Positions 20,889 to 26,200 of a stretch of 64,000 bases of DNA are shown here, one piece after another. Where the stretch lies: positions 2,790,001 through 2,854,000 of the forward strand of contig OZ249442.1 of NCBI GenBank assembly GCA_965235115.1, read 5' to 3'. The notes beneath the pieces are model-generated. The model saw only the letters and a list, made by a program, of their open reading frames with translations, searched no databases and had not been told where the DNA came from. How positions within the stretch are numbered: the first letter of the stretch is position 1; every line of letters starts with the position of its first letter. The DNA comes from Laetmonice hystrix. Lineage: Eukaryota. The position numbers were made by a program, and so were the translations under genes.

Positions 20889-23156
20889 TATTCTGACCAG
20901 AGAGAGAATATTCCAAATTCTAGAATCTCATACATGAGTATCTAAAATATACCACCCCGTACGTGACTATATATAATCACCGTCTATTATACACTATTGT
21001 ATGATATCCCTCTACCGGTGGATACACGCTCTTTATCTTACAAAGAATATCATGCACATGAGAAAAATCCTTATTAGGGATGGAATCCTTACATAGTGTT
21101 GTGCTGTGTGGTGTAACTCTTCGTCTATCTCGACATTAACCGACATTCCGTCAATCTACGTGTCACTCTGGATGAGGTGGTCAACAAAAAACTGATACTT
21201 TCAACTGGATATATACACCTAGAAATGAATCTGAGAATGAGGCCAGCCCGACACGGGCAGGCGACTACATGATGAATGTGTGGGGATGAATCTATGAAGG
21301 CCACTGTAAATAACTGCGCAAACAATAGGAGTAACAAGATGCTAATCTTCAGTGCTACCTGGAGATCAGCTGAGAAATGTTTAACATAAATCTTACAATC
21401 TGTGTGCAGCGAGTACTGCACGCGAGAGGGTGCCACAACCTTACAACAACATTGAAATAAGTATGCTCAAGTCAGTCAACACTTCGCCAGTGTTGTGTCT
21501 GTGTGACAACGGTCGGGTCACTACATATCACTTCTAGCAAACAGCAACCGTTTCCCCTTCCAATCATGAATAAAAAAAAAAAACTATATAATTAACTCAT
21601 TGCTTAGTCAAAGTGCTAAGATCAAAATTAACCATCCAAAAAAATGATGTTATATAATTAGGATTCTTCTTAAGACATGCAACTCTAGAAATCCAAGCAA
21701 CATATGGTACCGACACTGACGGGTTTTGTTCAACATTAGTTAACAGTTCAGCAAGTTCGAGAAATAAACACAAATTGCATTATATTTATTAAAATGTCAC
21801 CTTGGCCATGCCAGTGCGAGGTAGCATATAACACGCCATATACCGGTAATAGATATGACATCTGACATATTTAACGTTTGATGTAAGAAAGGATGTTTAA
21901 ACATCTCGACTGTAGATTGAAGACCATGTTACAATCGGAATAAATAGATGTACTTTAAGATCGCTAGAGTGTGAGAGATATGAGACAATGTCTCTTTGTT
22001 TCTGACGATGATTTATTCCAGCACGATCCTAGAGACGCCAGGTTCATACAGAGGACGTGTAATTAAAGGTCAAGGTCTGTGACGTATATCTTTGATCAAA
22101 TCCTACCGTTCGTCAGTCTCACAGAACTCAGACCTCAGTCAGCGGAACCTCTCACACTCTGACTTCATCCTCACACAGAACTAACAACATGTTACAAGTA
22201 TCTTCACATTCTTCGCCTGGATGAAATGTACAACACTCAATGAGTTGGACGACTTGCTCTTCAAACAAATCTTTCATTACCCACTGCGACAGGGAGTACA
22301 TTATACATTGTAGTAGAAAATAATTAATTCTGACATACTCTTTCACAATTAGCAGAGCTGTTGCGTTTTTAGCCTGCACCTATACATTCTTCATGTCGTA
22401 CTACTTTTTGCCAGGGGTTTAGAGATTTTTTAAAATATTGCCACTACAATTTGGATTAGTTTTCTCTTCTGTATCATGGGGCGGCAACTACAGCGGTTCC
22501 TGCGAGTCCAGGCAGAAAATATCCTATTTATATATTATAGGTTAGGGTCTGCTACTTGTATACAGGGACTGTATTAAGGTATGTACTTCCCCATCTTCCC
22601 TCATACCGTTTTGAATATTTTATATAAAGTAGTTTTTGTTTCTAGATTGAGATAATCTGAGACTTGGCAGGCCACTGTCTGCCACTTGTCTTCATGATCG
22701 GAATCAAACTCACTATATAACATTTGTAAACATGGAAGTCTTCATCCCACCAGGTGACTTGTTGGATTCAATGCCAACTCTTGGTTCAACTAGTGATCAT
22801 TATAACCCATTATGTTTTCATCTCTCGTAACTCTCTCTGGACTCATCTAGACATCAACAACAGTCGTTAGTAATCTCATAAAATCCAATTTCTACTGTAT
22901 AGCGGATATATCAAAATCCCTCATCAGGGCTGAACTCTGTGCCGTCAGGACCAGACAAGGTACTCCCGGCAGATGGCGTGCCGGTCAATGAGCTCTCGGA
23001 ATCATCTGTCTTCAGTTCCCCTGGACACCCGCCTTCAGTTCCCCCGACTTCCGCTAGGTGGCGAGCCAGTTAATGTAATGTTGGAATCAACTGTCTTCGG
23101 TTCCCCTGACTCCCGCCAGGTGTCTTCAGTTCCCCCGACTCCCGCCAAGCGGCGCC

Positions 23157-23249
23157 TCACGCAAGGAGACCGAGCCGCTGGACCTTGGCTGAGAGGAACG
23201 TATGCAGAATGAAAACGATTGGTTTGGGACTGGAGTGCATGTCCAACTC
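23157..23249 (-). CDS. SNTB1: Syntrophin canonical last coding exon
   Basis: GATTGCAG| acceptor; encodes [30 protein letters not shown]. Confidence 0.92.
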
Positions 23250-26200
23250 CTGCAATCAAAAGTCCAAACAGTTCATTGTAATACTTTGATCCAAACAGTT
23301 CATTGTAATACTTTGATCCAAACAGTTCATTGTAATACTTTGACCAAACAGTTCATTGTAATACTTTGATCCAAACAGTTCATTGTAATACTTTGACCAA
23401 ACAGTTCATTGTAATACTTTGATCCAAACACTTCATTGTAATACTTTGACCAAACAGTTCATTGTAATACTTTGACCAAACAGTTCATTGTAATACTTTG
23501 ATCCAAACACTTCATTGTAATACTTTGACCAAACAGTTCATTGTAATACTTTGATCCAAACACTTCATTGTAATACTTTGACCAAACAGTTCATTGTAAA
23601 ACTTTGACCAAACAGTTCGTTGTAATACTTTGATCCAAACAGTTCATTGTAATACTTTGATCCAAACAGTTCATTGTAATACTTTGTTCCAAACAGTTCA
23701 TTGTAATACTTTGACCAAACAGTTCATTGTAATACTTTGATTCAAACAGTTCACTGTATCCAAAGAGTTCATTGTAATACTTTGATTCAAACAGTTCATT
23801 GTAATACTTTGACCAAATAGTTCATTGTAATACTTTGATCCAAACAGTTCATTGTAATACTTTGACCAAACAGTTCATTGTAATACTTTGATTCAAACAG
23901 TTCACTGTATCCAAAGAGTTCATTGTAATACTTTGATTCAAACAGTTCATTGTAATACTTTGATTCAAACAGTTCACTGTATCCAAAGAGTTCCTTGTAA
24001 TACTTTGATCCAAAGAGTTCCTTGTAATACTTTGACCCAGTGATTGGTATCAAACTAACGACGAAAACATAATGGTATGTACGTGTACAACTTGTGGCAG
24101 TGAATCTCAGTTACGTTTCTAAGTTTTCGAAGTCTTCCCTTTCCTATCACATAATTATTATCTCTGACCAACAAGAAACACTAGAGGCAGTGGACGTGTA
24201 GTACAGTGTTTAGAGTTGTTGTTTACAGTGTCAGATAACACTGCGGTAACTTAGCATCCAATGTTGTCCTCTTGATGCCCGCCGTGTACATATATGTACA
24301 TGACGTGTACGTGCATATACCTGGGACAAGAAGAAGGGGTTTATCAACCAAGAAGTTTACCAACAATGTTTTTAGGGGTTATCTCACGTGCCGAATCGAC
24401 CGGAGTGATTCGACCGAACCGGATTCAGAAGTGGAGAAAAACGACGAGAGCAGTAGGCAGTAGTCCTATGACATAGTCGCTACATTTATAAAACTTTCTT
24501 ACTTAATACCCACCAAACTCACTAAAAACGATCGGGGAACTACGGATGTCATCTGAGAGGTGAAGTTCAAACATATTTCTTTTGTGAAACGCCAACTATT
24601 ACTTGAACTTCGTGAGACAACCCCTTTAAAACTAGGACCAGAAAATCATCACTTTCAACTTGCAGGAAGGAAGGATTTTGGAAACCTGAGGTTTCAAAGT
24701 TTACACCACTTTTTAAAACCTGAGGTTTCTCACAGCAGTCAAAGCATTCAAACTCTCGACCTATAAATCCAACAAAGACTTTTCCTTTATCTTAAACATG
24801 ATGAGAAAGGTACAGTGTCAACTCGGGCAATTCAGCTCACGTCATGCAAGAACGAGATCTGCAACAAAGTCAAACGATCAGAGTAGACGGAGAAAACGAT
24901 TCTAGTAATTCTGTATGGCAGAGTGACCAGGGTTGGGGGTGGGTGGGTGGGTGGTAATTTCAAACATGGATAAATCCCTGCAGCCGTGCCATCAGCAGAA
25001 TCAGGAATCTTGGTGTCTGAGAGCCATTGTGACCTTGACAGCAGCGGAGTTTGACCTCTCGCACGGTCTCTTCACATGAGGACTGCGTCAAAGTAGGTTC
25101 TCGCCGAGAGAAACACTTGCAACGTAAACACAAACGGTTTCGGGTTTTCTTCCAACGTGAGCTCCTAAAACATCATTCAAATCCCCCATCAACATCAGTT
25201 CAAACTGTCTGAACCCTGAGTAGAGCTAATAAAAATCATTCAAATCCCCCATCAACATCAGTTCAAACTGTCCTAACTTTCAGTCTAGCTTCCGAAACAT
25301 AACGCAAGAGTTTTTAGGCCAAGGTCCTGCACATAAAAGCTTTTACATCAGGACAACACGGTACCGGCATACATGACCTTGACCGAATTATTATAAAATA
25401 TCTCCTCAATCAGTCACCTGTTCTCCTTCCTCGCCGAAGTCGAGCCAGAGAAGTCGGATTCCATCATCGGCTGACATTCGTAGTTTCTCGTACGGGTAGT
25501 GCCAGAAGATGTGGTTCCGTCGACCATCCTGTGTATTGCGCATGTCGGTCAACGTGAAGCCGTGATCATAGTGTAAGGTCAACCTCGCTTCTTGACCTTG
25601 CCACGTGGTGGCTGCCAATACAAACGTTATAACTTTACCACCCGCCACGTGGTGGCTGCCAATACAAACGTTATAACTTTACCACCTGCCACGTGGTGGC
25701 TGCCAATACAAACGTTACAACTTTACCACCTGCCACGTGGTGGCTGCCAATACAAACGTTACAACTTTACCACCCGCCACGTGGTGGCTGCCAATACAAA
25801 CGTTACAACTTTACCACCCGCCACGTGGTGGCTGCCAATACAAACGTTACAACTTTACCACCCGCCACGTGGTGGCTGCCAATACAAACGTTACAACTTT
25901 ACCACCCGCCACGTGGTGGCTGCCAATACAAACGTTACAACTTTACCACCCGCCACGTGGTGGCTGCCAATACAAACGTTATAACTTTACCACCCGCCAC
26001 GTGGTGGCTGCCAATACAAACGTTACAACTTTACCACCCGCCACGTGGTGGCTGCCAATACAAACGTTATAACTTTACCACCCGCCACGTGGTGGCTGCC
26101 AATACAAACGTTATAACTTTACCACCCTTGGACAAAAATCATACCTGGGACCAGTTAAAAAAAAAACTTCAGATCTCACTTAAGCTCCTGTTTCTGATTG

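What the first reader, a model, noticed from the sequence alone, without database searches (positions are those of the whole stretch)
25072..25164. Duplicated alternative last exon giving syntrophin a second C-terminus
Not in the ORF track. A good acceptor (GATGTTTTAG|) 253 nt past the SU exon opens a phase-0, 93-nt exon encoding [30 protein letters not shown]. It is the same length as, and aligns gap-free to, the canonical [30 protein letters not shown] (EL, PKP, VF, L, FLSA conserved). The DNA has diverged while frame and length are preserved, which suggests selection. The syntrophin PH2/SU C-terminal region binds dystrophin/dystrobrevin, so the isoforms could differ in partner binding. I do not know of such mutually exclusive terminal exons in syntrophins.
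Basis: partly seen in the sequence, partly recalled or inferred. Interest (0 to 1): 0.75.

Follow-up and report, generated by a model that had tools for sequence, protein, structure and literature searches.

The report
Diverged spare last exon in syntrophin
This worm's syntrophin gene carries an old, much-changed but still intact second copy of its last protein-coding piece, which may give the protein an alternative tail; no RNA data were available to show that it is used.

Summary
Observation confirmed. On the minus strand, 253 nt after the syntrophin exon ending at 25418, a TTTTAG acceptor opens a phase-0, 93-nt frame (25164-25072). It aligns without gaps to the true last coding exon (23249-23157): same length, 13/30 residues, 48/93 bases, stop in the same codon. 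This is not chance (score 60 against at most 39 in 200 shuffles; alone it hits Pfam PF23012, E 2.6e-5).

The duplicate is old: its flanks and third codon positions match only at random level. About 25 loci from other worms have one canonical last exon, in the nearest relatives 169-554 nt downstream. The duplication therefore looks lineage-specific, and the diverged copy sits where relatives have their only last exon.

All amino-acid change lies on the copy's branch (dN about 0.6 against about 0). It lost 8 of 18 (near-)invariant residues, including the whole R-L-G-L-x-A tail. Yet it kept frame, length, stop and acceptor, and its changes fit the family better than matched neutral decay (P 0.01-0.03).

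- **Best reading (about 0.55):** an alternative 3' coding exon, KRAS4A/4B-like.
- **Rival (about 0.3):** a decaying relic.

No RNA was available. No canonical poly(A) signal or strong donor follows the copy. The scan noted other duplicated exons in this genome, not this one.

The parts
25418..25611 (-). Penultimate coding exon of syntrophin (first 70% of the C-terminal PH-like 'SU' domain); donor CAG|GTGACT, phase 0 at its end
   Evidence: tblastn of syntrophins. Pfam PF23012 positions 8-71, E 3.3e-23. The acceptor ttggcag|CC fits the family consensus KEVxCxxxWQGQE once the phase-1 end of exon ~30146-29946 is taken into account.
25165..25417 (-). 253-nt intron-like interval between the SU exon and the diverged copy. 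It has branch-like CTGAT and TTGAT at -31 and -25, and a TTTTAG acceptor.
   Evidence: Read directly from the sequence. In the nearest relatives the interval between the SU exon and their only last exon is 169-554 nt.
25168..25290 (-). Two tandem 63-nt units (87% identical) holding the copy's acceptor region. The upstream unit carries a pseudo-acceptor TTATTAG, and the repeat register runs a few bases into the exon.
   Evidence: the repeat finder family D3; pairwise alignment.
25072..25164 (-). Diverged duplicate of the last coding exon (30 codons + TGA): the candidate alternative C-terminus
24040..25071 (-). Unique spacer after the copy's stop. It has no AATAAA or ATTAAA (only GATAAA at 24791 and TATAAA at 24490), and the best donor-like sites match 7/9 and lie at least 684 nt downstream.
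   Evidence: There is no DNA homology to the region after the canonical exon.
23263..24039 (-). Minisatellite of about 30 x 27 nt, ending 13 nt before the canonical acceptor
   Evidence: TRF; the repeat finder family D2.
23157..23249 (-). Canonical last coding exon (end of strand 7 plus the C-terminal helix of the PH-like domain), under strong purifying selection
   Evidence: It shares 24-26/30 residues with relatives although third positions are saturated. PF23012 positions 73-100, E 3.4e-13. Model of the Lineus orthologue: strand at residues 79-83 and helix at 89-105 of 110.
21785..22017 (-). Two AATAAA hexamers (starting at 22017 and 21790), the likely poly(A) signals of the gene, 1.1-1.4 kb after the canonical stop

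Best explanation
An old tandem duplication in this worm's lineage copied syntrophin's last coding exon. The distal copy (23249-23157) kept the canonical sequence. The proximal copy (25164-25072) lies about where relatives have their only last exon. It diverged strongly but stayed an open, splice-competent, same-phase exon. Inferred mechanism: when the proximal TTTTAG acceptor is chosen, the mRNA ends its reading frame in the copy, and the canonical exon either becomes 3' UTR or is not reached. The protein would keep the domain but swap the end of the last beta-strand and the C-terminal helix of the SU/PH-like domain. The helix core (PKP, VF, L, FLSA) would remain, and the R-L-G-L-x-A tail, near-invariant across the sampled animals, would be replaced by an unrelated tail. 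Shown: homology, geometry, age, lineage restriction, asymmetric divergence and retention of frame. Inferred: past or present coding constraint, actual splicing, and any change in binding to dystrophin or dystrobrevin.
For: Homology is far beyond chance, and Pfam recognises the copy on its own. Phase, length, stop position and the AG acceptor are preserved. Similarity stops exactly at the exon edges: 48/93 bases inside against 44/186 in register in the flanks (Fisher P 6e-6), and blastn finds no flank homology. In a neutral-decay simulation tuned to the observed 13/30 identity, P(no internal stop and terminal stop kept) is 0.15-0.23. The copy's score against a profile of 84 canonical C-termini exceeds matched neutral decays with P 0.009-0.028, or 0.0005-0.0024 when the simulation starts from the unpolarised canonical exon. 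Calculated P(no indel in 93 nt) is 0.002-0.16 for indel:substitution ratios of 0.05-0.125, and P(AG kept) is 0.33-0.45. Losses are clustered: 10 of 14 (near-)invariant columns are kept in residues 1-22 and 0 of 4 in residues 23-30 (P 0.023). This is what a tail swap on a conserved helix core would look like. The core variant PKPFVFTL also occurs in working syntrophins of arachnids. The canonical copy is still under strong constraint (dN 0.11-0.14 to relatives, branch dN about 0 since the duplication). The proximal acceptor therefore cannot be constitutive, which fits a weak or regulated site.
Against: There is no transcript evidence at all: no protein or fragment among about 360 fetched syntrophin sequences ends in this tail. 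None of those comes from this species, so the blank is uninformative. No AATAAA or ATTAAA follows the copy before the canonical exon, and no strong donor either. The polypyrimidine tract is poor. The copy is absent from every related locus examined. It has lost 5 of 11 residues that are invariant from cnidarians to vertebrates. Substitution counts alone do not reject neutrality, because dS is saturated. A BLOSUM test of how conservative the replacements are is not significant (P 0.28).
Confidence: 0.55

Rival explanations
1. Relic pseudo-exon. After the duplication the distal copy took over, and the proximal copy is skipped by the spliceosome. It is drifting, and its intact frame is luck or reflects only a recent loss of use.
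For: All non-synonymous change sits on its branch (dN about 0.61 against about 0.003). Eight of 18 (near-)invariant residues are lost, including the whole conserved tail. The polypyrimidine tract is weak, with no canonical poly(A) signal or good donor. A young 63-nt tandem duplication has hit its acceptor region. It is absent from all relatives sampled. A neutral model with about 0.4-0.55 substitutions per site reproduces the observed identity.
Against: That much neutral change should usually bring a stop, an indel, or loss of the AG or TGA. The joint probability is roughly 1e-2 to 1e-4. Its substitutions fit the family better than neutral ones (P 0.01-0.03). Losses are clustered in the tail rather than spread (P 0.023).
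Confidence: 0.3
2. The exon is used, but as a regulatory or unproductive splice choice: a decoy acceptor or a premature-stop cassette that lowers canonical syntrophin output. In this reading the peptide itself does not matter.
For: The proximal acceptor competes with the canonical one across a short 253-nt intron. The exon carries its own stop and has no canonical poly(A) signal of its own.
Against: RNA-level function would not preserve protein-level similarity, length or the family-typical residues.
Confidence: 0.07
3. The copy did not arise from this gene's own exon but was inserted from a paralogous syntrophin gene, as proposed for KRAS exon 4A from NRAS. This concerns origin only and is compatible with either functional state.
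For: This origin has been proposed for KRAS4A (PMC9882654). The exon-exact limits of similarity would fit.
Against: No fetched syntrophin subfamily resembles the copy more than ordinary beta-type exons do (best score 68 of a possible 152). The copy lies at a distance from the SU exon typical of the single last exon in the nearest relatives.
Confidence: 0.05
4. Chance similarity of an intronic open frame.
For: The exon is short (30 codons).
Against: Score 60 against a maximum of 39 in 200 shuffles, with 21 the next best in the window. Pfam hit E 2.6e-5. Exact coincidence of acceptor, phase, length and stop.
Confidence: 0.01

Closest known systems
KRAS exons 4A/4B (homologous alternative last coding exons)
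   Same: Two homologous 3' coding exons lie in tandem. The proximal one carries its own stop codon. The globular domain is kept while the C-terminal segment is exchanged (PMC9882654; PMC8373072).
   Different: KRAS4A and 4B are both transcribed, translated and conserved for over 450 My. Here usage is unproven, the copy is seen in one lineage only, and no donor or poly(A) signal after it could be identified.
Tandem-exon-duplication-derived C-terminal substitutions (77 of 236 curated human events; Martinez-Gomez et al. 2021, PMC8373072)
   Same: Same origin (tandem duplication of a 3' coding exon) and same proposed outcome (homologous alternative C-termini, usually through alternative poly(A) use).
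   Different: The paper's main text, as searched here, does not mention a syntrophin, and its gene list was not available to check. The human events have transcript and often peptide support, and this one has none.
Mutually exclusive duplicated internal exons (Kondrashov and Koonin 2001; Letunic et al. 2002, as cited in PMC9882654)
   Same: Exon duplication followed by divergence of one copy, with same-phase, same-length copies.
   Different: This is a terminal exon with its own stop, so exclusivity would come from termination rather than from splicing rules. Strictly, it is not mutually exclusive splicing (PMC8373072).

Membership tests
Syntrophin C-terminal PH domain (Pfam PF23012), last strand plus helix segment | Sequence match to the family profile | tested here: inconclusive
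   The copy alone scores 24.8 bits, E 2.6e-5, over profile positions 73-95, just under the 27-bit whole-protein cut-off. The canonical exon scores 50.1 bits over 73-100. Joined to the SU exon (82.3 bits) the domain would pass easily, but the spliced product was not submitted.
Syntrophin C-terminal PH domain (Pfam PF23012), last strand plus helix segment | Residues invariant in 39 diverse animal syntrophins (D3, P8, K9, P10, F13, H16, L19, S20, K22, G27, L28 of the exon) | tested here: not met
   6 of 11 are kept. D3T, H16Q, K22R, G27A and L28V are changed, and the near-invariant R25 and A30 are also lost.
Tandem-duplication-derived alternative C-terminal exon (KRAS4A/4B type) | Two homologous exons in tandem in one gene, on the same strand, in the same phase, each giving a complete reading frame | tested here: met
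Tandem-duplication-derived alternative C-terminal exon (KRAS4A/4B type) | Usable 3' splice site on the alternative exon | tested here: inconclusive
   The AG, the TTTT core and branch-like CTGAT/TTGAT at -31/-25 are present, but the tract is purine-rich (9/18 pyrimidines). Only a consensus check was possible.
Tandem-duplication-derived alternative C-terminal exon (KRAS4A/4B type) | Own poly(A) signal, or a donor joining it to the downstream exon | tested here: not met
   No AATAAA or ATTAAA between 25071 and 23250, only the weak variants GATAAA at 24791 and TATAAA at 24490. The best donor-like sites match 7/9 and lie at least 684 nt downstream. Read-through to the gene's AATAAA at 22017 or 21790 remains possible.
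Tandem-duplication-derived alternative C-terminal exon (KRAS4A/4B type) | Transcripts or peptides containing each exon | not testable with these tools
   No sequence of this species turned up in the protein and contig collections searched. No alternative-type tail occurs among about 360 syntrophin sequences.
Tandem-duplication-derived alternative C-terminal exon (KRAS4A/4B type) | Both copies conserved in related species | tested here: not met
   There is a single canonical last exon in L001, L002, L003/L004, L006, L008-L011 and about 20 further worm loci, and none within 854 nt in L005. All of these relatives are distant, with third positions saturated, so close relatives remain untested.
Tandem-duplication-derived alternative C-terminal exon (KRAS4A/4B type) | Purifying selection on the alternative copy | tested here: inconclusive
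   dS is saturated. Indirect tests favour constraint: profile score against neutral decay P 0.01-0.03, no stop or indel, and clustered losses P 0.023.

The most novel reading that the evidence does not exclude
The copy encodes a natural 'tail-swap' syntrophin. This isoform would keep the fold of the C-terminal PH-like domain but lack the R-L-G-L-x-A end shared by almost all animal syntrophins. It could thereby switch or release the dystrophin/dystrobrevin partner, giving this worm a splicing-controlled way to uncouple the PDZ scaffold from the dystrophin complex.
Probability: 0.15. Interest if true: 0.6.

Novelty: new member of a known kind. Interest (0 to 1): 0.35.

Why it matters
The last 30 residues of syntrophin are among its most conserved: 11 are invariant and 7 nearly so from cnidarians to vertebrates. 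They form the closing helix of the domain that, together with PH2, binds dystrophin-family proteins (PMC2133114). If the exon is used, it would be a naturally occurring isoform that keeps the helix core but replaces the conserved tail. That would point directly at which residues matter for folding and which for partner binding. It would also be, as far as these searches show, the first homologous alternative C-terminus described for a syntrophin. If the exon is only a relic, the locus is still a clear example of exon duplication in a gene end crowded with tandem repeats that span splice sites. It would then have no wider consequence.

Tried and rejected
- **dN/dS between the copies and to relatives:** dS is saturated everywhere, so no ratio can be given.
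- **Indel:substitution ratio from orthologous last introns of five relatives:** the introns are unalignable (p about 0.5), so the estimate is meaningless and was dropped. The ratios used are assumed ranges, with one local data point from the 63-nt repeat.
- **Flank homology, local alignment and blastn:** nothing found. Both flanks are overwritten by tandem repeats, so this says little about the original size of the duplication.
- **Transcript or isoform searches:** these covered the 50%-identity representatives, 90% clusters with the genomic ORF, a C-terminal profile containing the copy and a full-length profile. No alternative-type tail and no sequence of this species turned up.
- **Cluster look-up for organism names:** no names returned.
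- **Chance similarity:** rejected.
- **Assembly or haplotype duplication:** rejected, because the copies differ at 48% of bases.
- **Overlapping gene on either strand:** rejected, because only short ORFs of 57 aa or fewer lie there.
- **Spliced SU+copy protein in the structure or family tools:** not submitted, because it is not a contiguous window sequence.

Full report
**1. The observation**

The syntrophin gene runs on the minus strand. tblastn with fetched syntrophins places exons at about 43102-42689, 38897-38781, 30146-29946, 25611-25418 and 23249-23157.

The exon ending at 25418 (...GAA CAG|GTGACT) finishes in phase 0. An in-frame TAG lies directly upstream. The canonical last exon, 23249-23157, has the same length.

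The gap-free alignment gives 13/30 identical residues plus the stop, and 48/93 identical bases (16, 19 and 10 of 30 at codon positions 1, 2 and 3).

The match is not chance:
- Its gap-free BLOSUM62 score is 60.
- The next best of 127,816 frames in the window scores 21.
- 200 shuffles of the 64 kb never exceed 39.
- By itself the 30-residue peptide hits Pfam PF23012 (Syntrophin C-terminal PH domain) at positions 73-95, E 2.6e-5.

No larger ORF on either strand overlaps it.

**2. What the exon encodes**

PF23012 is covered by the 25611-25418 exon (positions 8-71) and the last exon (positions 73-100).

I modelled the orthologous 110 residues of the Lineus longissimus protein from a 39-sequence alignment (pLDDT 87). 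The result is a PH-like sandwich that ends in a helix. The last exon supplies the end of strand 7, a loop, the 17-residue C-terminal helix and a 5-residue tail.

In that alignment 11 exon positions are invariant and 7 nearly so, from cnidarians to vertebrates. The copy keeps P-K-P, V, F, L, F-L-S-A and the initial E-L. It changes D3, H16, K22, R25, G27, L28 and A30. So 10 of 14 conserved columns survive in residues 1-22, and 0 of 4 in residues 23-30 (P 0.023).

Its core variant PKPFVFTL also occurs in working arachnid syntrophins. A few natural syntrophins have divergent tails after FLSAK.

**3. Age and origin**

Similarity ends exactly at the exon edges: 48/93 bases inside, against 21/93 upstream and 23/93 downstream in register (P 6e-6). 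blastn finds no homology between the two neighbourhoods, and not even between the exons. Third positions are at random level. The duplication is therefore old.

Both neighbourhoods have been reworked by tandem repeats:
- a 63-nt tandem duplication carrying the copy's acceptor;
- a 30 x 27-nt minisatellite ending 13 nt before the canonical acceptor;
- a 29-nt repeat right after the canonical stop.

**4. Relatives**

Genomic contigs of related animals were fetched through the penultimate exon. The closest named full-length protein is from the nemertean Lineus longissimus (65% over the exons in the window), followed by the annelid Capitella teleta (61%). Earlier notes of this scan call the genome an annelid; I did not verify that.

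- In L001, L002, L003/L004, L006, L008, L009, L010 and L011 there is one canonical last exon, 169-979 nt after the penultimate exon.
- About 20 further worm loci also have exactly one.
- None has a second copy scoring 30 or more.
- L005 has none within 854 nt.

The duplication is therefore specific to the window's lineage among the taxa sampled. The diverged copy (253 nt) lies at a distance typical of the single last exon in the nearest relatives, while the canonical-looking copy lies 2168 nt away.

All these relatives are distant, because third positions are saturated against the window. They cannot show whether close relatives share the copy.

**5. Constraint or decay?**

A three-point decomposition puts all non-synonymous change on the copy's branch (dN about 0.61 against about 0.003). 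The canonical exon clearly remains in use. Because dS is saturated, dN/dS is unavailable.

A neutral model with about 0.4-0.55 substitutions per site reproduces 13/30 identity. Substitution counts alone therefore do not reject decay. Other features do weigh against it:
- P(no internal stop and terminal stop kept) is 0.15-0.23.
- P(AG kept) is 0.33-0.45.
- P(no indel in 93 nt) is 0.002-0.16 for indel:substitution ratios of 0.05-0.125.
- Among simulated neutral derivatives with matched identity and no stop, only 0.9-2.8% reach the copy's score against a profile of 84 canonical C-termini. The figure is 0.05-0.24% without polarising position 4.

A plain BLOSUM test of replacement conservativeness is not significant (P 0.28).

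Taken together, long-term neutrality is unlikely. Recent loss of function cannot be excluded.

**6. Can it be expressed?**

The acceptor has AG, a TTTT core and branch-like CTGAT/TTGAT at -31/-25, but a purine-rich tract. No AATAAA or ATTAAA lies between the copy's stop and the canonical exon; the gene's AATAAA hexamers are at 22017 and 21790. The best donor-like sites after the copy match 7/9 and lie at least 684 nt away.

If the exon is used, the likeliest form is a proximal-acceptor choice whose transcript runs on to the gene's normal 3' end. A weak variant signal (GATAAA at 24791, TATAAA at 24490) is the other option.

No transcript evidence could be obtained. Four database searches returned about 360 syntrophin proteins and fragments, none with this tail and none from this species.

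**7. Comparison with known systems**

Homologous alternative C-terminal exons born by tandem duplication are well known. Seventy-seven of 236 curated human events are C-terminal (PMC8373072). KRAS4A/4B is the textbook case with a proximal exon that carries its own stop (PMC9882654). PH2 and SU together are required for binding utrophin and dystrophin-family proteins (PMC2133114), so a changed SU ending could plausibly alter binding. That remains inference.

A literature search found no report of such an exon pair in a syntrophin. The gene list of the human survey was not available to check.

**8. Verdict**

- **Most likely (about 0.55):** a lineage-specific alternative 3' coding exon, used now or until recently.
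- **Main rival (about 0.3):** a decaying relic.

If real, it is a new member of a known kind. Interest is moderate to low until RNA data exist.

Noticed in passing
window 25600-26127: Twelve tandem 44-nt units (98% matches). Each carries the penultimate exon's acceptor (ttggcag|) and its first 12 bases, followed by GGTGGTAAAG, which looks like a donor. The real exon starts in the last unit at 25611.
   Followed up: partly
window 25168-25290: A 63-nt tandem duplication (87% identity) of the copy's acceptor region creates an upstream pseudo-acceptor TTATTAG. Use of it would meet the in-frame TAG before the exon.
   Followed up: yes
window 23263-24039 and 23092-23147: A 27-nt x 30 minisatellite ends 13 nt before the canonical acceptor, and a 29-nt x 1.9 repeat starts 10 nt after the canonical stop. 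All three 3' splice sites at this gene end are flanked by tandem repeats.
   Followed up: partly
L012 789-1085, L041 1339-1632, L044 177-473, L046 286-570: In these metagenome contigs the penultimate and last syntrophin exons are contiguous, with no intron. This means either intron loss in those animals or cDNA-derived contigs.
   Followed up: no
L005 828-1681: One of the closest relatives by the penultimate exon (GCA_013332675.1) has no last exon of either type within 854 nt, so its last intron is also long.
   Followed up: partly
L003 1264-3540 and 11356-11829: Retrotransposon ORFs (RT, RNase H, integrase) lie upstream of the relative's syntrophin exon. An Acyl_transf_1 (MCAT-like) gene lies downstream on the opposite strand. 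Another note of this scan places MCAT near 16 kb in the window, which would make this shared synteny.
   Followed up: no
proteins P0220, P0225, P0237, P0202, P0209: Some natural syntrophin C-termini keep the helix core, but the residues after it differ from the usual R-L-G-L-x-A (for example ...IQQLTDST). The tail is therefore not absolutely fixed in animals.
   Followed up: no
cluster 3 (P0162, P0242): A 57-residue syntrophin fragment is listed in the same 90% cluster as a 1002-residue bacterial SrfB protein. This is probably a clustering artefact.
   Followed up: no
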